Sequence record: MT135026.1
Strand: one strand, 5' to 3'
Length of the DNA: 64,000 nt
A program made the translations under genes and the position numbers. The notes under the pieces are model-generated. The model saw nothing but the letters and a program-made list of their open reading frames with translations. It searched no databases and was not told the origin of the DNA. This document shows positions 42,344 to 62,563 of this stretch, in pieces (the first letter of the stretch is position 1; every line of letters starts with the position of its first letter).

Positions 42344-42373
42344 GTTTACAACGATATAAACATCATGTACAAT
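42344..42373 (+). promoter_or_regulatory. Early-type promoter for the tRNA sub-cluster
   Basis: GTTTACA-17-TACAAT with an A-tract upstream. Confidence 0.78.
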
Positions 42374-42912: not shown

Positions 42913-43000
42913 AGCTTGCATACTGCAATTTAACTTACTCTATTGATCGCTCGACGAACTCAGTTCAGACAGCGATAAACAGACCAAAGAACGCAAGCTG
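42913..43000 (+). ncRNA. CWGCAA-motif RNA (88 nt)
   Basis: AGCTTGC-ATA-CTGCAA ... GCAAGCT-G. Confidence 0.7.
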
Positions 43001-43623: not shown

Positions 43624-43683
43624 AAGCAATCTTTCAGCAAACAATACAAAACTTTTATTTGGAAAAAGAGAAAAGGATTGCTG
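43624..43683 (+). ncRNA. CWGCAA-motif RNA (60 nt) with an anticodon-like hairpin
   Basis: AGCAATCT-TT-CAGCAA ... CTTTT-ATTTGGA-AAAAG ... GGATTGCT-G. Confidence 0.7.
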
Positions 43684-44250: not shown

Positions 44251-44367
44251 AGAGTGTTTTCAGCAAACAATTTACTAATATTCTTCTGATGAAAAGAAAT
44301 GTTTGGGGTTCGATTCCCTTTCAGTGTTGGTATCACTGGTCTGGACGACGCAAGTAATAACACTCAG
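44251..44367 (+). ncRNA. CWGCAA-motif RNA with anticodon-like and T-arm-like hairpins
   Basis: GAGTGTT/AACACTC stem; TTCTT-CTGATGAA-AAGAA; GGG-TTCGATT-CCC. Confidence 0.72.
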
Positions 44368-44978: not shown

Positions 44979-45193
44979 AGACAATATACAGCAACAAATT
45001 AAAATCTTACTAAAAATGGTAATGATCTTAACCTGGGCAGTGCTTCGGTGCAGCTTGAAAGGAAAGATTCTCTCTGCCTAGAAATAGTCAGATAGGCGCG
45101 TCGCTGAAACAGACGATATTTGCTTGTTGAGAAGCAACAAGATAGTCAACTCCGATTCATGTTAAAGACGAAAAAACACTTCGGTATTGTCTG
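44979..45193 (+). ncRNA. CWGCAA-motif RNA (215 nt)
   Basis: AGACAATA/TATTGTCT stem; shares internal blocks with 47221-47467. Confidence 0.75.
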
Positions 45194-45422
45194 TACTTAA
45201 TTCGTCGGAAACGACACTACAGCCGAAAGGCACGATATGCTAACTCAGTTAGCCGTGATACAGGAAGTATCGCGTGGCATTATTATGAACGTTTCTAGTT
45301 ATCGTCATGTAAAACAATCAAAACTAAGATGAGGTAATAGTACCCACTATGTGGTTCCTCGCTCAGACCATGAATATATGGTGTCAGCCCGTGTGCGATT
45401 AAATGAGTTAATTACTACTTTT

Positions 45423-45498
45423 GGAGATGTAGCTCAAGTGGTAGAGCAATGGTCTCATAAGCCATTAGATCCGATTTCGAGTATCGGTGTCTCCACCA
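45423..45498 (+). tRNA. tRNA-Met (CAT), elongator-like
   Basis: ATGGT-CTCATAA-GCCAT, A73, CCA. Confidence 0.88.
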
Positions 45499-45523
45499 AA
45501 TTCAAGCAAAGAGGATAAGAAGC

Positions 45524-45681
45524 ATGACTACTTTACACTAAGCAAGGGCAACATACGCGATAAGATTCGCTGTGTTGAAAATCGTCTCGCGAAAGAGACC
45601 AACCCGTTCTTTATAAGAACACTTACTGTAGAGCTTACGAATCTGCGTGCAATACGTGATTTGTTCGACGCTTCAGATTAA
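45524..45681 (+). pseudogene. Possibly frameshifted small ORF
   Basis: SD GAGGA + ATG 45524 reads MTTLH-stop, while the long open frame (TLSKGNIRDKIRCVE...) is a different frame. Confidence 0.4.
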
Positions 45682-45685
45682 CAAT

Positions 45686-45759
45686 GCGGGTATGATGTAA
45701 TGGTAGCATGACGTCCTTCCAAGTCGTTCGTCTCGGTTCGAGTCCGTGTACCCGCTCCA
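45686..45759 (+). tRNA. tRNA-Gly (TCC)
   Basis: GCGGGTA acceptor, CTTCCAA loop, U73, CCA. Confidence 0.92.
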
Positions 45760-45764
45760 ATTTT

Positions 45765-45838
45765 GGTCCCTTAGTATAATGGCAGTACGTCTCTTTTACA
45801 CAGAGAAAGAAGTGGCTCGATTCCACTAGGGACTACCA
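45765..45838 (+). tRNA. tRNA-Val (TAC)
   Basis: TCTCT-TTTACAC-AGAGA, CCA. Confidence 0.9.
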
Positions 45839-45861
45839 TTCTTTATGATGAGAAATAAATT

Positions 45862-46101
45862 ATGACGCCTGTATTACTTGAAACTCACGAATACGTAAAT
45901 CAAAACCAAATTGAAAAACTGAAACGCATGGACAGACTTATGTTTGACTGTTGGCGCGCTGGTTATAAACGCGGTAAGATTTTAGAACGTGCTCTTGAAA
46001 TTGAGTCTTCAACAACTTCTGATGACATCGAAATTTATTTCAAAAATATGTTTACGAGAGAGCTATCGCCTGATAGTATCTACTTAAAGAAAACTGATTA
46101 A
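45862..46101 (+). CDS. Hypothetical protein
   Basis: 79 aa ORF filling the Val-His tRNA gap. Confidence 0.65.
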   Translation: MTPVLLETHEYVNQNQIEKLKRMDRLMFDCWRAGYKRGKILERALEIESSTTSDDIEIYFKNMFTRELSPDSIYLKKTD

Positions 46102-46155
46102 TGCACAGGGAGCGCATTCGTTTGATGTCGTAAACATCCCAAAGTGTACTTTGGT

Positions 46156-46232
46156 GTGGCAGTGGGTGAAGTGGAAATACCCCCGGGTTGTGATTCCGGA
46201 AGATGCGGGTTCGATCCCCGTCTGTCACCCCA
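46156..46232 (+). tRNA. tRNA-His (GTG)
   Basis: CCGGG-TTGTGAT-TCCGG, C73, CCA. Confidence 0.88.
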
Positions 46233-46335
46233 AAGTGCATTTAGCGAAAAAAGCATTGTAGTAGCGCATGGGAATTCTGAATGCTTGAAATACCCATTAA
46301 GATCGCCAGTAGCTCATGCAATGCACTAACATATT

Positions 46336-46409
46336 GCCCGAATCGTATAATGGAAGTATGAGGGATTGCAAATCCCGCGGTCAGAGTTCGATTCTCTGTT
46401 CGGGCTCCA
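46336..46409 (+). tRNA. tRNA-Cys (GCA)
   Basis: GGGA-TTGCAAA-TCCC, U73, CCA. Confidence 0.92.
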
Positions 46410-46411
46410 AT

Positions 46412-46488
46412 GCGCACGTGGTCCAATTGGCAGAGGCATGAGGCTTAAAATCTCAGGGATGGCGGTTCGAATCCGCCCGTGCGTACCA
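46412..46488 (+). tRNA. tRNA-Leu (TAA), short variable arm
   Basis: TGAGG-CTTAAAA-TCTCA, variable region GGGAT, A73, CCA. Confidence 0.9.
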
Positions 46489-46603
46489 AACTCTAGCATA
46501 AGCCGCGTTCTACACGAAGCTAGACTACCGCCGTTGAAAACGGTCTCAGCCGGGCGAAAGCTGACAGGCGTTAGGGATTAAAGAGTTGCGGCAGCTTATT
46601 CAA

Positions 46604-46680
46604 GCCCAACTAGGCCAATTGGCAGAGTCGCTAGTTTCAAACACTAGAAGTTCCGAGTTCGAATCTCGGGTTGGGCACCA
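46604..46680 (+). tRNA. tRNA-Leu (CAA), short variable arm
   Basis: CTAGT-TTCAAAC-ACTAG, variable region AAGTT, A73, CCA. Confidence 0.9.
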
Positions 46681-46902
46681 AATTCACTTAGCAACGCGAA
46701 TCGAAAGAGAGTGAATAGACCGTACGACACTATGGTCTTAAAAGAAGATATAGCTGAAAGGCTATGTGTAGACCTGCTAAGAGTCCCGCTGGTCGTTAAA
46801 TTATCAAAAGGGATCTGCGAAGCGCGTGGCACACGCCAGCAATAAGAGCAAATATGTGTCTGAGCATGAGAGCAGCATGCCACTGTTTAAAAGTCGTTCA
46901 GT

Positions 46903-46910
46903 TATAAATA
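46903..46910 (+). promoter_or_regulatory. T4-type late promoter
   Basis: TATAAATA upstream of the 59-aa ORF. Confidence 0.8.
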
Positions 46911-46935
46911 CAATAAACTAACTGAGGGATGACAA

Positions 46936-47115
46936 ATGAAACTTAAAACGTTTGATGAATATCACAAGCTTGTTGAGAAAGTCGAGAAGCGTGGCGACAA
47001 ATGGGTTGCTCTTTCATCTAAAGGTCGAGTACTTGGTACTCATGACACTGAGAAAGAAGCCAACGCGCAAATCGCTGCTGTCGAGATTAGCAAAGCAGAG
47101 CGTGGTAAGAAATGA
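46936..47115 (+). CDS. Candidate internal head protein (59 aa)
   Basis: Not in ORF track; MKLKTFDEYHKLVEKVEKRGDKWVALSSKGRVLGTHDTEKEANAQIAAVEISKAERGKK; TATAAATA at 46903-46910, GAGG SD, capsid-targeting-like N-terminus. Confidence 0.7.
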   Translation: MKLKTFDEYHKLVEKVEKRGDKWVALSSKGRVLGTHDTEKEANAQIAAVEISKAERGKK

Positions 47116-47120
47116 TCTAC

Positions 47121-47209
47121 GGAGATATGGTCTAAAGGTATGACAGCACCCTGCTAAGGTGTCGGACGTTAATAGCGTTCTCTGGGTTCGATTCCCAGTA
47201 TCTCCGCCA
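47121..47209 (+). tRNA. tRNA-Ser (GCT)
   Basis: GCACC-CTGCTAA-GGTGT, long variable arm, G73, CCA. Confidence 0.92.
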
Positions 47210-47220
47210 AATTCGCAATA

Positions 47221-47467
47221 AGACATTGTACAGCAATATTACTAATCAAAGAAGCAAACTTTAATAGTAATGAGGCGCACTAGCTGCTTTCTCAGTGATG
47301 ACGTGAGCCTGTCGCATTCTCGTGGTAGGAAATGACCATTAAGACGGTGTTCGTACTGTAAAACGAAATAGGTCTCATGCCGAATCATGGGTATTTTCTC
47401 GATGAGAAACATCGAGATAGTCAATTGAGATTTAAGCAAAGACGATAAAACACTTCTCGAATGTCTG
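47221..47467 (+). ncRNA. CWGCAA-motif RNA (247 nt)
   Basis: AGACATT/AATGTCT stem; AGATAGTCAA and AAAGACGANAAAACACTTC blocks shared with 44979-45193. Confidence 0.75.
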
Positions 47468-47482
47468 TGTATTGCACATTAG

Positions 47483-47507
47483 AACCTGCCTTGAGCAGGT
47501 TTTTTTG
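47483..47507 (+). terminator. Terminator closing the tRNA cluster
   Basis: AACCTGC-CTTGA-GCAGGTT followed by a T-run. Confidence 0.85.
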
Positions 47508-47554: not shown

Positions 47555-47932
47555 ATGTACAAATCAAACAAACGAACATCAATATCCAAAATGAAGCGCG
47601 TCGCTGAAATGCCAGACTCAGAGATAATCTTTACCTTGAGTCGTTATGAAAATATTGACGGCGTGACAATCAAAAGTTCAAATACACTTAACGCAGTAGT
47701 GGTACGCGGATTGTTTCTGTATCGCACTGTAAGCGATTATTCACAGACATCCGAACAAAGACGTTGTGAACGTATTGAATTCGACTCAGACACTGCTCTA
47801 GAGCGTTATATGAACCTTCACACACGAAAGCGAAAACGATTCACGCTTGATGATGTACTTTACGGGACTGAACGCTGTCGCTTCGAAAATGAATTTGATG
47901 TGCAGTTGAGCCGAAAACACATTTTCTCATGA
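47555..47932 (+). CDS. Hypothetical protein
   Basis: GAGGTG SD, ATG 47555. Confidence 0.7.
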   Translation: MYKSNKRTSISKMKRVAEMPDSEIIFTLSRYENIDGVTIKSSNTLNAVVVRGLFLYRTVSDYSQTSEQRRCERIEFDSDTALERYMNLHTRKRKRFTLDDVLYGTERCRFENEFDVQLSRKHIFS

Positions 47933-49182: not shown

Positions 49183-49539
49183 ATGTACGTTATGATTGAT
49201 GATCTGCGTGATATTAATAAGTTCACGTCAGATTACGTACGTGATGATGAAAAACTCGTACTTCGAACATTCGAAGACGGTATGAATTTCGTCAAGCACA
49301 CAAATCTAACTGACATCACGCTATTCATGGATAACGATCTAGGTGATGATGTTGGTAGAGAGGGATACGATATTCTCTCTCATGCGATTGATCATCGTAA
49401 TTTTCCGCGCACTGTTGTTCTAGTGACAAGCAATCCTGTTGGTCATAGTAAAATGGCTCTGTTGCTTTCTCACTCTGGTCAGTATAAGCGCGTTGGTTCA
49501 ATTTTTATGAGGTACGATACATGTCGCACGTCAATGTAA
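49183..49539 (+). CDS. Cyclic-phosphate processing receiver-domain-like protein
   Basis: MIDDLR, RTFEDG, FMDNDLG, EGYDIL, VTSNPVG match the stand-alone phage REC pattern (LDDxR...DHDLG...GYD...HSANPVG). Confidence 0.7.
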   Translation: MYVMIDDLRDINKFTSDYVRDDEKLVLRTFEDGMNFVKHTNLTDITLFMDNDLGDDVGREGYDILSHAIDHRNFPRTVVLVTSNPVGHSKMALLLSHSGQYKRVGSIFMRYDTCRTSM

Positions 49540-50589: not shown

Positions 50590-50632
50590 CGACATTTTAC
50601 AGCAATTTAATATGAGGAATAAACAATGTCAG
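50590..50632 (+). promoter_or_regulatory. CWGCAA-motif hairpin sequestering the start codon of the TROVE-like gene
   Basis: GACATT-TTA-CAGCAA ... GAGGA ... AATGTC-AG; ATG 50626 lies in the 3' strand. Confidence 0.75.
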
Positions 50633-52062
50633 CATTTATGAACGCTATGCAATCAAACGATTCACGTACAGCAAACGGTGCAGTTACTCACAGCACTTCA
50701 GGTAACGAGTGTCTAAACTTGTTCTTCGGTATTGCTGCTATGCGTGGTAACGATCAGTCTAAAACACTGTTCGGTCGTGCGTTTGCAGAAAACCCCGAAC
50801 TAGCGACACGCATTCTTTTATGGTCTCGTGATGTTCGCGGTGGTGCGGGTGAACGTGGTACTTTCCGTACTCTATTCACTAAACTTTGTAATGAGCAGCC
50901 TGACGTAGCTCGTGCTGTAATGTCGAAAATTCCAGAACTAGGTCGTTTCGACGACTTGATTTCTGCGTTCGGTACAAGTCTTGAGAAAGACGCGATCACA
51001 TTGTGGTCAAACGCGATTGTAAACGACAAGAACGCTCTTGCTGCTAAGTGGTTCCCACGTGAAAACAGCAAAAACGGTCATGTGTTCAAGCGCACAATCA
51101 AGTCTCTTGGTGTAACTGCGAAGCAGTGGCGTAAGATTCTAGCACTTTTGTCTGACACTGTTGAACAGAAGATGTGTGCGCAAGAATGGGATGCAATCGA
51201 CTTTGGTAAGTTGCCATCTGTAGCGTCTGCTCGTTATCAACAAGCATTCGGTCGTAACGCTTCTGCTCGTTACACAAGCTACATCGAGTCACTTCAAAAA
51301 GGTGAAGCGAAGATCAACGCTGGTGCATTGTTCCCATATGATGTCGTTAAGAGCGTTAGTCATGGTAATGCGTCTGTAGCGAACGAGCAATGGAAAGCCC
51401 TGCCGAACTACATGGAAGGCTCTGATGAGCGCATCATCCCAGTTGTTGACGTGTCTGGCTCTATGAGCACGCCGATCAACGCAGGTACAGATCGTTCAGG
51501 TGTGACTTGTAAGCAAGTTGCAATGTCTCTTGGCATCTATGTTGCTGAACGCAATGAAGGCATCTTCAAAGATCAGTTCATTTCGTTCTCAAGCGATCCG
51601 CACTTCCACCAGTTACGCGGTAGCTCACTAAAAGAGCGTCTTGACAACATGAATCGCTCAGGTGAAGACATGAGCACAAACATCGGTAAATGCTTTAACG
51701 TTCTGTTAGAGCGTGCGAAACGTGCAAATCTTTCACAAGAAGAAATGCCAACCAAGTTGCTTATCATGAGCGACATGGAATTCGACCAAGCAAACACTGG
51801 TGGCGGCTGGTATGGTCGCGGCGAACGTGCAAACTTCGACGCAATCAAAGCTATGTACGCACGTGCTGGCTATGAAATGCCACAACTAGTCTTCTGGAAC
51901 ATTCGTGGTCGTCTTGGCAACGTTCCGGTTAAAGCTGGCGAAGCGGGTACTGCACTGGTATCGGGTTGTAGCCCATCTATCCTGACTTCATTGTTGGGTG
52001 GTGAGCTTGAGCCAGTCAAGATCATGCTGAAAACTGTAGGCGTTGATCGCTACAGCTTTTAA
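50626..52062 (+). CDS. DUF2828-type TROVE/Ro60-like helical domain + vWA protein
   Basis: RDVRGGAGER, ALAAKWFPRE, KINAGALFPYDVV, MIDAS DVSGS, STN, SDMEFD, VFWNIR; architecture parallels Ro60/Rsr. Confidence 0.8.
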   Translation: MSAFMNAMQSNDSRTANGAVTHSTSGNECLNLFFGIAAMRGNDQSKTLFGRAFAENPELATRILLWSRDVRGGAGERGTFRTLFTKLCNEQPDVARAVMSKIPELGRFDDLISAFGTSLEKDAITLWSNAIVNDKNALAAKWFPRENSKNGHVFKRTIKSLGVTAKQWRKILALLSDTVEQKMCAQEWDAIDFGKLPSVASARYQQAFGRNASARYTSYIESLQKGEAKINAGALFPYDVVKSVSHGNASVANEQWKALPNYMEGSDERIIPVVDVSGSMSTPINAGTDRSGVTCKQVAMSLGIYVAERNEGIFKDQFISFSSDPHFHQLRGSSLKERLDNMNRSGEDMSTNIGKCFNVLLERAKRANLSQEEMPTKLLIMSDMEFDQANTGGGWYGRGERANFDAIKAMYARAGYEMPQLVFWNIRGRLGNVPVKAGEAGTALVSGCSPSILTSLLGGELEPVKIMLKTVGVDRYSF

Positions 52063-61547: not shown

Positions 61548-61856
61548 TTAATTGAGTTTCGAAGTTACCTGAATTCTATGTCGGTCTTTCTTCATGTCGT
61601 AATCCGGTGAATTACGGTCTTGAATTAAAACGCCGAGCACGTTCGTGTAATGCTTCGAAGTTTTTGTGATGTGAGAATACACGCCACCAGGAACTGTCGG
61701 GTCTTGGAACGTCTTGATATTAACGATTTCGCCGACTTCTAACTGAAGTTCAACCGAATCGTTAGTTCCGCCGACTGCATACCAGTACTTGACTAGTGTA
61801 TTGAAATTGCCTGTATCAGTGATTTTCACAGTCTGATTTACAATCATTTTTCCCAT
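61548..61856 (-). CDS. Hypothetical protein
   Basis: TAATG-coupled to phoH. Confidence 0.75.
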   Translation of the reverse strand: MGKMIVNQTVKITDTGNFNTLVKYWYAVGGTNDSVELQLEVGEIVNIKTFQDPTVPGGVYSHITKTSKHYTNVLGVLIQDRNSPDYDMKKDRHRIQVTSKLN

Positions 61857-62563
61857 TATTGAGCCTTGTCGATGATGTCAAGAGCAAGCTTACAAGCACC
61901 AGAACGAACTACGTCCTTGTTTGTGAACTCAATAATCTCGATGCCTGAGCGTTGCTGATTACGAATTTCATTGACCATCCACGCTAGACCACTGATTTCT
62001 TTCTGACCAGTACGATAGATCATCTTGTGGTCGTCTTGTTTCAAGTCACCACAGAAAACCATTTTCGTATTCTCGCCGATACGAGTCATGATGGTCTGAA
62101 TTTCAGTTTTAGTTAAGTTCTGAGCTTCATCGACGACGATAAAACAGTTGTCGAATGTCTTGCCTCGAACGAATTGAATAGGTTCAGCGTGAATGCGTTT
62201 GTTCCAGTCGCATTTGAATTTATCTGCGCCTAGTCGGTCTTTCAATGGCTGCGTTACTGTTTGAATCCAAGGTTCCATCTTTTCTTCAAGAGTACCGGGT
62301 AAGTAACCGAGTTCTTCACCGCATGAAAGCGTCGGCTTCAAGATGATGAATTCGGTGTAGTCAAAAGCTGAGTACATGTCTGCACCTAGAGTCGTTGCAA
62401 GCCATGTCTTACCTGTACCCGCAGAACCAATCGCAAATACAAATGCACCTGAGCCGTCTTCACCGACTTCTTCCTGCAATGCAGCCGCGTATTGCTCTTG
62501 GTTGAAGGTCAGTAACTCGATGCGTTGTAGTGTGCGTTCTTCAGAGTTCTTCTTTTTGCCCAT
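61856..62563 (-). CDS. phoH: PhoH-like ATPase
   Basis: GSAGTGKT, LGYLPGTLEEKMEPW, FVRGKTF, DEAQN, GDLKQDD, DVVRS. Confidence 0.95.
   Translation of the reverse strand: MGKKKNSEERTLQRIELLTFNQEQYAAALQEEVGEDGSGAFVFAIGSAGTGKTWLATTLGADMYSAFDYTEFIILKPTLSCGEELGYLPGTLEEKMEPWIQTVTQPLKDRLGADKFKCDWNKRIHAEPIQFVRGKTFDNCFIVVDEAQNLTKTEIQTIMTRIGENTKMVFCGDLKQDDHKMIYRTGQKEISGLAWMVNEIRNQQRSGIEIIEFTNKDVVRSGACKLALDIIDKAQ

What the first reader, a model, noticed from the sequence alone, without database searches (positions are those of the whole stretch)
44979..47467. Two homologous 215/247-nt ncRNAs with conserved scaffold and variable core
Seen in sequence: 44979-45193 and 47221-47467 share the closing motif helix, a TTACTA...T(A/G)GTAATGA hairpin after CAGCAA, and 3' blocks AGATAGTCAA...GATT.A and AAAGACGA(A/T)AAAACACTTC before the closing strand. 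The middle regions differ in length and sequence and contain several hairpins. Inference: a paralogous ncRNA family with a constant protein-binding module and swappable effector or guide domains.
Basis: seen in the sequence. Interest (0 to 1): 0.68.

Follow-up and report, generated by a model that had tools for sequence, protein, structure and literature searches.

The report
Two large phage Y-like RNAs
Two unannotated, related RNA genes of about 215 and 247 bases sit among the tRNA genes of a KVP40-type Vibrio phage. They carry the same short "handle" that marks small RNAs found beside a Ro60-like protein gene in many unrelated phages, so they are most likely large partner RNAs of that protein, a virus version of the Ro60/Y-RNA particle that I did not find described.

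Summary
Window 44979-45193 (el1) and 47221-47467 (el2), both on the + strand, are paralogous structured RNAs inside the tRNA operon of Vibrio phage V09, a KVP40-like phage.

- **Conservation:** both copies occur in all 11 KVP40-like genomes examined; el2 is reduced to about 150 nt in one (1.081.O).
- **Structure:** three shared helices are 96% paired, and 11 of their 18 pairs show compensatory changes.
- **Known families:** no Rfam family matches either element.
- **Handle:** the closing helix plus unpaired UACAGCAA and an A-rich 3' strand is shared with smaller sibling RNAs in the same phage. The same handle lies beside DUF2828 genes, on the gene's strand, in six other phage groups and in 53 of 79 uncultured viral contigs.
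- **Protein:** the phage's DUF2828 protein (50626-52062) folds as a full-length Ro60.

Best reading: el1 and el2 are large Y-RNA-like partners of this Ro60-like protein. What their bodies do is unknown. The "swappable guide" idea is not supported.

No RNA-seq data were available and binding is inferred, not shown. This scan had already noted the handle family on other DNA, including KVP40. I found no published description; one preprint only speculates that such RNAs exist.

The parts
44979..45193 (+). el1, whole RNA (215 nt)
   Evidence: Present in all 11 KVP40-like genomes examined. RNAalifold predicts 46 pairs, 16 of them with compensatory changes.
44979..44986 (+). el1 P1, 5' strand of the closing helix; pairs with 45185-45192
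   Evidence: 100% paired in 20 copies. Four helix variants differ by double changes.
44987..44994 (+). el1 unpaired handle motif UACAGCAA
   Evidence: CAGCAA is invariant or nearly so in 20 copies. The same motif occurs in sibling RNAs and in RNAs beside DUF2828 genes of other phages.
45004..45026 (+). el1 P2 hairpin
   Evidence: Folds on its own (z -3.6). Orthologues have different sequences that still form a hairpin at this place.
45025..45068 (+). el1 P3, long irregular hairpin capped by UUCG
   Evidence: RNAalifold. Its base (AUCUU/AAGAU) is kept in 9 of 10 aligned copies (F86 departs). The interior varies.
45074..45091 (+). el1 P6, GNRA-capped hairpin (GAAA)
   Evidence: The stem sequence differs in 6E35.1a, 1.081.O and F86, but a GAAA or GUGA loop is kept.
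45092..45115 (+). el1 AUAGG linker plus P7 hairpin (loop GCUGAAACA)
   Evidence: Stem CGUC/GACG becomes CGAC/GUCG in 6E35.1a and CGUC/GGCG in 1.081.O. The el2 counterpart is at 47368-47391.
45123..45141 (+). el1 P8 hairpin
   Evidence: Six of 7 pairs show double changes across el1 and el2 copies. Fold z -3.6.
45142..45149 (+). el1 conserved AUAGUCAA
   Evidence: AGUCAA is invariant in 20 copies.
45152..45184 (+). el1 Px. Helix 45152-45155 pairs with 45181-45184 and encloses the conserved loop UU.A.G..AAAGACGAAAAAACACU.
   Evidence: 100% paired. Five covarying versions: CCGA/UCGG, GCGA/UCGU, GCGA/UCGC, GAGA/UCUC, GUGA/UCAC. The 3' strand runs straight on into P1.
45185..45193 (+). el1 P1 3' strand plus the trailing G of the CUG(U) end
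47221..47467 (+). el2, whole RNA (247 nt); last gene of the tRNA operon
   Evidence: It starts 12 nt after tRNA-Ser (ends 47209) and is followed by a terminator.
47221..47236 (+). el2 P1 5' strand (47221-47227) plus GUACAGCAA
47238..47271 (+). el2 P2 hairpin (two-tier)
47274..47309 (+). el2 P3. Outer helix GGCGCAC/GUGAGCC encloses a small hairpin and UGAUGA.
   Evidence: The outer helix keeps pairing through double changes in nt-1 and 1.081.O. The inner GCUG/CAGU becomes GCCG/CGGU in 6E35.1a and F86.
47322..47339 (+). el2-specific hairpin with conserved loop AGGAAAUG
   Evidence: The stem covaries (UGGU/ACCA, GAAGU/ACUUC, GAGU/ACUC) while the loop stays fixed.
47350..47416 (+). el2 hairpin 47350-47367, AUAGG plus P7 hairpin 47368-47391 (loop CCGAAU), P8 hairpin 47398-47416
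47417..47467 (+). el2 AUAGUCAA, Px (47426-47430 pairs with 47455-47459), conserved loop, P1 3' strand 47460-47466, trailing G
47481..47503 (+). Intrinsic terminator closing the tRNA/ncRNA operon
   Evidence: Conserved after el2 in 6E35.1a and 1.081.O.
42345..42373 (+). Likely sigma-70-type promoter of the operon that contains el1 and el2
   Evidence: Consensus scan, 10 of 12 matches. Inference only.
50590..50631 (+). Miniature handle (GACAUU-UUACAGCAA...AAUGUC) over the ribosome-binding site and AUG of the Ro60-like gene
   Evidence: Present in the leaders of all six KVP40-like genomes checked (about five lineages); the last A of CAGCAA is U in F86.
50626..52062 (+). DUF2828/DUF7788 protein with a full-length Ro60 fold; the presumed partner of el1 and el2
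   Evidence: Pfam. AlphaFold model with pLDDT 82.8; its ten best PDB matches are all Ro60/TROVE structures.

Best explanation
el1 and el2 are two paralogous, stably folded non-coding RNAs. They are cut out of the long tRNA-operon transcript of KVP40-type vibriophages.

Each RNA is closed by a helix that joins its 5' and 3' ends. The 5' strand of that helix is followed by unpaired UACAGCAA, and an A-rich stretch lies upstream of the 3' strand. This 'handle' is the recognition site for the phage's Ro60-fold protein (DUF2828, window 50626-52062). That makes el1 and el2 the largest members of a phage family of Y-RNA-like partner RNAs.

Between the two strands of the handle each RNA carries a conserved multi-hairpin body. 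It includes a GNRA hairpin, AUAGG-linked hairpins, and a helix (Px) that is continuous with, and probably stacks on, the closing helix. By analogy with Y RNAs, this body would either gate the protein or tether it to another factor or RNA substrate.

- **Shown here:** the RNAs' conservation and fold, the shared handle, the genomic linkage of the handle to DUF2828, and the Ro60 fold of the protein.
- **Inferred:** transcription and processing, physical binding, and any function of the body.
For: **The RNAs are real and structured**
- Two copies occur in each of 11 phage genomes; el2 is reduced to about 150 nt in 1.081.O.
- P1, P8 and Px are 96.3% paired, against 29-45% in slid controls, and 11 of 18 pairs show double changes.
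- For el1 alone, 16 of 46 predicted pairs are compensatory.

**The handle is shared within the phage**
- WG-N8-CWGCAA occurs 20 times in the window, against 10 +/- 3 expected.
- Nine of those sites lie on the + strand within 38.8-47.2 kb.
- These sites include small closed RNAs at 42913-43000, 43625-43683 and 44251-44366. Hairpin-form copies lie inside tRNA-like genes.

**The handle lies on the protein's own mRNA leader**
- It is kept in all six KVP40-like genomes checked, about five lineages.

**Linkage to DUF2828 outside this clade**
- Handle RNAs lie on the gene's strand beside the gene in E. coli phage EC6 (4 RNAs), Campylobacter phage PC14 (2), Listeria phage LP-125 (3), Mycobacterium phage Rumpelstiltskin (3) and Sinorhizobium phage phiN3 (3-4). 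There is a weaker case in Aeromonas phage phiAS5.
- None is found in the T4 tRNA region or in an E. coli rRNA operon.
- In 79 IMG/VR contigs carrying a homologue there are 87 hits on the gene strand, 35 on the opposite strand and 22 after shuffling. Fifty-three loci are positive.
- Handle density is 1.37 per kb in the 400 nt after the stop codon, against 0.04 per kb inside the gene.

**The protein is Ro60-like**
- The ten best Foldseek PDB matches are all Ro60/TROVE structures (E 8e-9 to 2e-6, TM 0.48-0.63, full length).
- Atlas neighbours carry TROVE plus vWA_Ro60 domains.
- The profile's best PDB sequence matches are TROVE proteins.

**Precedent in the literature**
- Y RNAs are encoded within a few kb of Ro60 on the same strand (PMC4201824).
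- A Thermus phage Ro60 binds two phage-encoded Y-like RNAs and host PNPase (PMC12135203).
- The Ro60-like gp130 of a Felix-O1-type phage counters the Ppl defence system, and its authors guessed that Y RNAs hide in the adjacent tRNA array (10.1101/2024.10.10.617714).

**Operon context**
- A promoter lies at 42345-42373 and a terminator at 47481-47503. RNA-repair-type genes are nearby, including cREC at 49183-49539.
Against: - No expression data: no RNA-seq run holds this DNA. The ends and the stability of the RNAs are therefore inferred.
- Nothing here shows binding.
- el1 and el2 lie 5.4 and 3.2 kb upstream of the protein gene, not directly adjacent as in most other phages.
- In el1 and el2 the A-rich strand is separated from the closing helix by Px, so the handle geometry differs from that of the small family members.
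- The canonical Y-RNA protein-binding motifs (GGUCCGA, GNCGAA) and the tRNA-like module of YrlA are absent.
- The el-type body was not found outside KVP40-like phages. It therefore has no independent comparative support, and its function is unknown.
- The handle could instead be a processing signal.
Confidence: 0.6

Rival explanations
1. el1 and el2 are stable by-products or accessory RNAs of the tRNA operon, positional equivalents of T4 species 1 and 2 RNAs (rnaC/rnaD). The helix-plus-CAGCAA element would then be a signal for an RNase that excises them, unrelated to the Ro60-like protein.
For: The region is syntenic with T4: gene 1, 57A, 57B, the tRNAs, then rnaD and rnaC at the distal end. 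T4 rnaD follows tRNA-Arg(UCU), as el1 does. The elements lie between tRNAs in one operon.
Against: By eye there is no sequence similarity to rnaC or rnaD, and the T4 region has no handle. Handle RNAs also flank DUF2828 genes where there is no tRNA array, as in Mycobacterium phage Rumpelstiltskin and Sinorhizobium phage phiN3. The handle also sits on the protein's own mRNA leader.
Confidence: 0.15
2. The bodies act as decoys or mimics of a host RNA (rRNA, tRNA anticodon arm, CsrA-binding sRNA) or of a defence nuclease's substrate, with or without the Ro60-like protein.
For: - The P7 loop in several copies reads like a Phe-type anticodon loop (CUGAA).
- The el2 hairpin loop AGGAAAUG contains a GGA.
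- Another phage RNA in a tRNA array was read by this scan as an rRNA mimic (s1-155915).
- The Felix-O1-type homologue of the protein counters a defence system.
Against: - Local alignment of 22 copies to E. coli 16S, 23S and 5S rRNA gives z of 2.6 or less, which is not significant.
- There is no Rfam match at E up to 10.
- The loop resemblances are short and not uniform across lineages.
Confidence: 0.12
3. They are trans-acting antisense or guide RNAs whose variable cores, or 3' end, pair with phage or host transcripts.
For: The el2 3' end is 24/26 identical to the + strand at 62135-62160, and so complementary to the phoH mRNA encoded on the - strand (E 2e-4).
Against: - The match falls to 22, 18, 16, 17 and 13 of 26 in VH7D, nt-1, 6E35.1a, F86 and 1.081.O. 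The changes are silent changes in phoH with no compensating change in el2.
- The paired segment is buried in P1 and Px.
- No other antisense match has an E-value of 0.17 or lower.
- The cores are structurally constrained, not hypervariable.
Confidence: 0.05
4. Not RNA genes at all: small protein-coding genes or DNA-level repeats.
For: Some GenBank records place a 'hypothetical protein' over el1. A 65-aa ORF lies on the - strand under el2.
Against: - Indels are not multiples of three.
- Substitutions are compensatory within stems.
- G-U pairs fit only the + strand.
- The ORFs are not conserved.
Confidence: 0.02

Closest known systems
Bacterial and phage Y RNAs: YrlA/YrlB, Yrn1, phiLo Yrl1/Yrl2 (partners of Ro60/Rsr)
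   Same: - Encoded a few kb from a Ro60-fold gene, on the same strand.
- The 5' and 3' ends form a stem, with a conserved unpaired motif beside it as the presumed protein site.
- Several paralogues with different bodies occur per genome.
- Sibling RNAs in the same operon carry T-arm-like and D-arm-like pieces, as YrlA does.
   Different: - The protein matches Pfam DUF2828/DUF7788, not TROVE (PF05731).
- The handle motif is UACAGCAA plus an A-rich strand, not GGUCCGA, GNCGAA or CGAA.
- el1 and el2 are about twice the length of Y RNAs and have no tRNA-like domain.
- They are embedded in a tRNA operon.
- No binding data exist.
Dictyostelium Class I RNAs (Rfam RF01414)
   Same: The Rfam consensus has a 5' G, a 6-bp terminal stem, CUUACAGCAA directly after the 5' strand, an A-rich 3' part, and an end in CUG. 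This is the phage handle almost base for base. RF01414 is also the lowest-E-value Rfam match for small sibling RNAs of V09 (15.2 bits) and of phage EC6 (19.7 bits).
   Different: - Class I RNAs are eukaryotic, 42-65 nt long, and reported only in dictyostelids. Their known binder is the RRM protein Rnp1A.
- The phage scores are far below the gathering score of 41.5.
- el1 and el2 themselves give no hit.
- I could not test whether dictyostelids have a DUF2828 protein.
T4 species 1 and 2 RNAs (rnaC, rnaD)
   Same: Stable RNAs of unknown function at the distal end of a T4-type tRNA cluster, in a syntenic region and following tRNA-Arg.
   Different: They are 119-139 nt long, with no similarity seen by eye and no handle. 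No DUF2828-type gene is annotated in the T4 tRNA region shown; that T4 has none anywhere is my recollection, not tested here.
Large CAGCAA-handle RNAs beside DUF2828 in uncultured phages (seen here: L164, L166, L174, L180, L182, L210; L172, L187, L192, L207; phage D479)
   Same: - They are 170-311 nt long with the same handle.
- Many have a GNRA-capped hairpin soon after the handle.
- In one group a helix lies directly 5' of the closing strand, as Px does.
- AUAGG repeats occur in the D479 RNA.
   Different: nhmmer finds no sequence homology to el1 or el2 among the IMG/VR RNAs (D479 was not in that search). The bodies are specific to each lineage.

Membership tests
Phage CAGCAA-handle RNAs (linked to DUF2828; not in the literature I could search) | [quoted passage not shown] | tested here: met
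   P1 is 100% paired in 20 copies, with four covarying versions.
Phage CAGCAA-handle RNAs (linked to DUF2828; not in the literature I could search) | Unpaired N(2-3)-CAGCAA directly 3' of the 5' strand | tested here: met
   U-ACAGCAA in el1 and GU-ACAGCAA in el2.
Phage CAGCAA-handle RNAs (linked to DUF2828; not in the literature I could search) | A-rich segment directly before the 3' strand, with the RNA ending in C(U/A)G | tested here: inconclusive
   The A-rich AAAGACGA(A/U)AAAACAC and the CUG end are present. However, 4-5 bp of Px lie between the A-rich strand and P1, unlike in the small members.
Phage CAGCAA-handle RNAs (linked to DUF2828; not in the literature I could search) | Same genome and strand as a DUF2828 gene, usually within a few kb | tested here: met
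   The gene is at 50626-52062 (+), 3.2 and 5.4 kb downstream. The linkage holds in six other phage groups and in 53 of 79 viral contigs.
Y RNA / YrlA (Ro60 partner RNAs) | Bound by a Ro60 orthologue | not testable with these tools
   The protein has the Ro60 fold. Binding needs an experiment.
Y RNA / YrlA (Ro60 partner RNAs) | Conserved Ro-binding motif (GGUCCGA, or GNCGAA-N0-1-G near the 5' end) in the terminal stem region | tested here: not met
   The 5' region carries UACAGCAA instead. GCCGAA occurs only in the internal P7 loop of some el2 copies.
Y RNA / YrlA (Ro60 partner RNAs) | tRNA-like module (T arm and D arm), the YrlA subclass | tested here: not met
   No tRNA or YrlA match at E up to 10 inside el1 or el2. 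No GGUUCGA-type T arm is present.
Y RNA / YrlA (Ro60 partner RNAs) | Encoded within about 4 kb of the Ro60 gene on the same strand | tested here: inconclusive
   Same strand. el2 is 3.2 kb away and el1 is 5.4 kb away.
Dictyostelium Class I RNA (RF01414) | Reaches the Rfam gathering score (41.5 bits); about 60 nt long | tested here: not met
   No hit for el1 or el2. Small siblings score 15.2 and 19.7 bits.
Dictyostelium Class I RNA (RF01414) | Short terminal stem starting with G, an 11-nt motif ending in ACAGCAA, and a 3' CUG(U) | tested here: met
   el1 reads A-GACAAU..ACAGCAA ... AUUGUC-UGU, and el2 likewise.
Ro60/TROVE protein family (for the partner protein) | HEAT-repeat ring plus vWA/MIDAS domain | tested here: met
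   AlphaFold model with pLDDT 82.8 and pTM 0.82. The ten best PDB matches are all Ro60/TROVE, aligned over the full length. The DxSGS MIDAS motif is invariant.
Ro60/TROVE protein family (for the partner protein) | Matches Pfam TROVE (PF05731) | tested here: not met
   Only DUF2828 and DUF7788 are reported. Profile matches to PDB TROVE chains are weak (E 0.1-0.8).

The most novel reading that the evidence does not exclude
el1 and el2 are examples of a separate 'large RNA' subunit of a widespread viral Ro60-like particle. In many unrelated phages a roughly 58-nt handle RNA and a 170-310-nt handle RNA lie next to the DUF2828 gene. The large, lineage-specific bodies would be the specificity or effector modules. 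They might recruit a host exoribonuclease or block a host defence. The near-identical handle of the orphan Class I RNAs of Dictyostelium would mean the same RNA-protein recognition exists in eukaryotes.
Probability: 0.3. Interest if true: 0.85.

Novelty: new variant of a known kind. Interest (0 to 1): 0.7.

Why it matters
Ro60 and its Y RNAs are a conserved RNA-surveillance particle that remains poorly understood. A parallel system built on a divergent Ro60-fold protein and a different RNA handle appears to be common in phages with tRNA arrays, including model phages of the KVP40, Felix O1 and Listeria P100/A511 types.

If that holds, it would give functions to many "empty" gaps in phage tRNA clusters. 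It would also supply the missing RNA partner for a protein already shown to counter a bacterial defence system. And it would offer a testable lead for the orphan Class I RNAs of social amoebae.

el1 and el2 are the most elaborate RNAs of this kind in a culturable phage-host pair, so they are good starting material for biochemistry and structure work.

Tried and rejected
- **Rfam:** searched at gathering score and at E up to 10, on the whole window and on each element alone. Nothing matched except the neighbouring tRNAs.
- **rRNA mimicry:** local alignments of 22 copies to E. coli 16S, 23S and 5S were not significant (z of 2.6 or less). This includes eye-catching stretches such as el2 against 16S 1058-1084 and the el2 P7 loop against 5S loop C.
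- **Guide or antisense role:** the only notable hit was the el2 3' end against the phoH mRNA (24/26, E 2e-4). It was rejected because the match decays without compensation in five other lineages.
- **el-type bodies outside KVP40-like phages:**
  - A specific DNA pattern found only VH7D in IMG/VR.
  - The same pattern found only chance coding matches in metagenomes. A looser pattern was non-specific.
  - nhmmer against 85 DUF2828 loci found nothing.
- **T4 rnaC/rnaD:** syntenic, but with no similarity by eye.
- **RNA-seq:** no RNA run holds this DNA, so I did not use read laying.
- **Structure prediction:** a single-sequence model of the protein was useless (pLDDT 37.5). An alignment-based model worked.
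- **PDB by sequence:** a single-sequence search gave only spurious repeat-protein hits.
- **K-turn and anticodon-loop readings** of individual loops: considered but not uniform across lineages, so not claimed.


Full report
**What the window is.** The window matches Vibrio phage V09 at 100% and KVP40 at 98%. These are T4-like phages of the genus Schizotequatrovirus. The finding lies inside their large tRNA cluster, which holds 27-30 tRNA genes on the + strand between 39.2 and 47.2 kb. Neither element is annotated in KVP40.

**The observation.** They align at 76% column identity. A pattern search in 11 related genomes returned exactly two such elements per genome, each with the same ends. The genomes were V09, KVP40, phi-pp2, VS2, VH7D, ValKK3, nt-1, 6E35.1a, D484, F86 and 1.081.O. 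el2 is reduced in 1.081.O. BLAST finds each element in 50 phage records, all from Vibrio phages. el2 is always the last gene of the array and is followed by an intrinsic terminator. A promoter-like site at 42345-42373 and the terminator at 47481-47503 bracket one operon that contains both elements.

**Structure.** On a 20-sequence alignment (A2), three helices shared by both paralogues are 96.3% paired. With the partner slid by 1-3 columns, only 29-45% pair. Eleven of the 18 pairs change on both sides, and none of 500 shuffles reaches the observed values. The three helices are:
- **P1**, the closing helix, with four covarying versions.
- **P8**, the hairpin before AUAGUCAA.
The 4-5 bases after AGUCAA-NN pair with the bases immediately 5' of the P1 3' strand. 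Five covarying versions exist. P1 and Px therefore share one continuous strand and probably stack.

Px encloses the most conserved stretch of the RNA, which includes AAAGACGA(A/U)AAAACAC.

For el1, RNAalifold gives 46 pairs, 16 of them compensatory. The model is a junction closed by P1. It carries P2, a long UUCG-capped P3, a GNRA-capped P6, an AUAGG-linked P7 with loop GCUGAAACA, P8 and Px. el2 has the same outline plus a second tier on P2, an extra domain with UGAUGA, and a hairpin whose loop AGGAAAUG is fixed while its stem covaries.

Lengths vary by non-multiples of three, and the G-U pairs fit only the + strand. These are RNAs, not ORFs or DNA repeats. Rfam has no match, even at E up to 10 on each element alone.

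**The handle and its partner.** Before looking at earlier notes I had found a DUF2828/DUF7788 gene at 50626-52062, downstream on the same strand, and suspected a Ro60-like protein. Earlier notes of this scan then supplied the pattern WG-N8-CWGCAA, which I tested myself.
- The pattern occurs 20 times in the window, against 10 +/- 3 expected. Nine sites are on the + strand within 38.8-47.2 kb.
- Those sites include small closed RNAs at 42913-43000, 43625-43683 and 44251-44366.
- Circularly permuted hairpin versions lie inside tRNA-like genes.
- A miniature copy overlaps the ribosome-binding site and AUG of the DUF2828 gene. That copy is kept in all six KVP40-like genomes checked.

**Linkage outside this clade.** Handle RNAs lie on the gene's strand next to the DUF2828 gene in five further phages:
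- E. coli phage EC6 (four RNAs)
- Campylobacter phage PC14 (two)
- Listeria phage LP-125 (three)
- Mycobacterium phage Rumpelstiltskin (three)
- Sinorhizobium phage phiN3 (three or four)

There is a weaker case in Aeromonas phage phiAS5. The T4 tRNA region and an E. coli rRNA operon have none.

In 79 uncultured viral contigs that encode a homologue (45-55% identity), a strict search gave 87 hits on the gene strand, 35 on the other strand and 22 after shuffling. Fifty-three loci were positive. Handle density is 1.37 per kb in the 400 nt after the stop codon, against 0.04 per kb inside the gene.

**The protein.** An AlphaFold model built from 33 sequences has pLDDT 82.8 and pTM 0.82. Its ten best PDB matches are all Ro60/TROVE structures: Xenopus, human and Thermus phage phiLo. 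They align over the full length with E 8e-9 to 2e-6 and TM 0.48-0.63. The next matches are isolated vWA domains. Atlas neighbours are TROVE plus vWA_Ro60 clusters, and the best PDB sequence matches of a profile are TROVE chains, though weakly. So the protein has the Ro60 fold while falling outside Pfam's TROVE family.

**Literature.**
- A canonical phage Ro60 binds two phage Y-like RNAs and host PNPase (PMC12135203).
- Jumbo-phage genomics noted TROVE proteins with a tRNA-like partner (PMC7824862).
- A 2024 preprint found that the Ro60-like gp130 of Felix-O1-type phage Bas63 counters the Ppl defence. It guessed that Y RNAs might hide among the adjacent tRNA genes, but did not identify them.
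- I found no paper that describes the CAGCAA handle in phages, or any ncRNA of KVP40.

**Resemblance to Dictyostelium Class I RNAs.** Their published description (short terminal stem, an 11-nt motif beside the 5' strand, a CUGU end) and the Rfam consensus (G-stem-CUUACAGCAA ... A-rich ... stem-CUG) match the phage handle closely. RF01414 is the lowest-E-value Rfam match for small sibling RNAs in V09 and EC6, but at 15-20 bits against a threshold of 41.5. This is a resemblance, not membership.

**What the bodies do.** This remains open.
- They are not similar to E. coli rRNAs.
- They are not convincingly antisense to anything in the window. The el2-phoH match is not maintained in other lineages.
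- They are not found outside KVP40-like phages.
- Large handle RNAs of 170-310 nt do recur beside DUF2828 genes in other phages, often right after a roughly 58-nt one. One group has a Px-like helix.
- The divergent vibriophage D479 has a 311-nt handle RNA with four AUAGG repeats, a motif also conserved in el1 and el2.
- This suggests a general 'small plus large RNA' layout with lineage-specific large bodies.

**Verdict.** The reading as a paralogous family with a constant protein-binding module is supported by comparative evidence. The 'swappable or guide' part is not. The most likely mechanism is a Y-RNA-like one. The P1/UACAGCAA/A-rich handle docks on the Ro60-fold protein. The structured body modulates the protein or tethers it. 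The protein limits its own synthesis through the handle copy on its leader. Expression, processing and binding are all inferred.

This scan had already met the same handle family on other DNA, including the KVP40 copies of these very RNAs (s1-156050 and others). This report adds the Px helix, the covariation statistics for el1 and el2, the fold test of the protein, the 79-contig linkage test, and the negative tests for mimicry and guiding.

Noticed in passing
window 45194-45422: A 230-nt unannotated gap between el1 and tRNA-Met. It holds several GNRA-type hairpins (for example GUCGGAAACGAC) and may be a further structured RNA without the handle.
   Followed up: no
window 46489-46603 and 46681-46935: G+C-rich, hairpin-dense spacers between tRNA-Leu genes and before the small ORF at 46937. 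A possible hairpin-form handle (GCGUG-GCA-CACGC-CAGCAA) lies at about 46822-46842.
   Followed up: no
window 44251-44366: Handle RNA whose body carries a T-arm-like GGGGUUCGAUUCCC followed by a D-arm-like stem. This is the permuted tRNA layout of YrlA. EC6 has the same kind of RNA at L132 10397-10522.
   Followed up: partly
window 62135-62160 (phoH, - strand gene 61856-62563): 24 of 26 bases are identical to the el2 3' end, and so complementary to the phoH mRNA (E 2e-4). The match is not maintained in other lineages, so it is probably coincidence.
   Followed up: yes
window 47596-47609: A 14-nt exact copy of the el1 P7 5' half (GCGCGUCGCUGAAA) lies inside the ORF just downstream of el2 (E 0.04).
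   Followed up: no
L228 (Vibrio phage D479) 12615-12925, - strand: A 311-nt handle RNA (AGACAGU...AUUGUCU) with four AUAGG repeats, each followed by a hairpin and GUGAA. It may be a distant relative of el1 and el2.
   Followed up: partly
L164, L166, L170, L174, L180, L182, L210 (IMG/VR), just after the DUF2828 stop codon: A recurrent pair: a roughly 58-nt handle RNA followed by a 170-250-nt handle RNA. The large ones share CAACUUCUCA, a GCCGA-type hairpin and ACGAACA before the closing strand.
   Followed up: partly
L169 2950-2985, L192 2954-2986, L136 4950-4984: Miniature handles just upstream of the DUF2828 start codon in other phages, with helix sequences that differ from V09's. This fits a conserved leader operator.
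   Followed up: partly
L134 (Listeria phage LP-125) 7855-11506; window 49183-49539: RNA-repair genes accompany the DUF2828 gene: an RtcB-like ligase and an RNA ligase in LP-125, and a cREC domain protein in V09.
   Followed up: no
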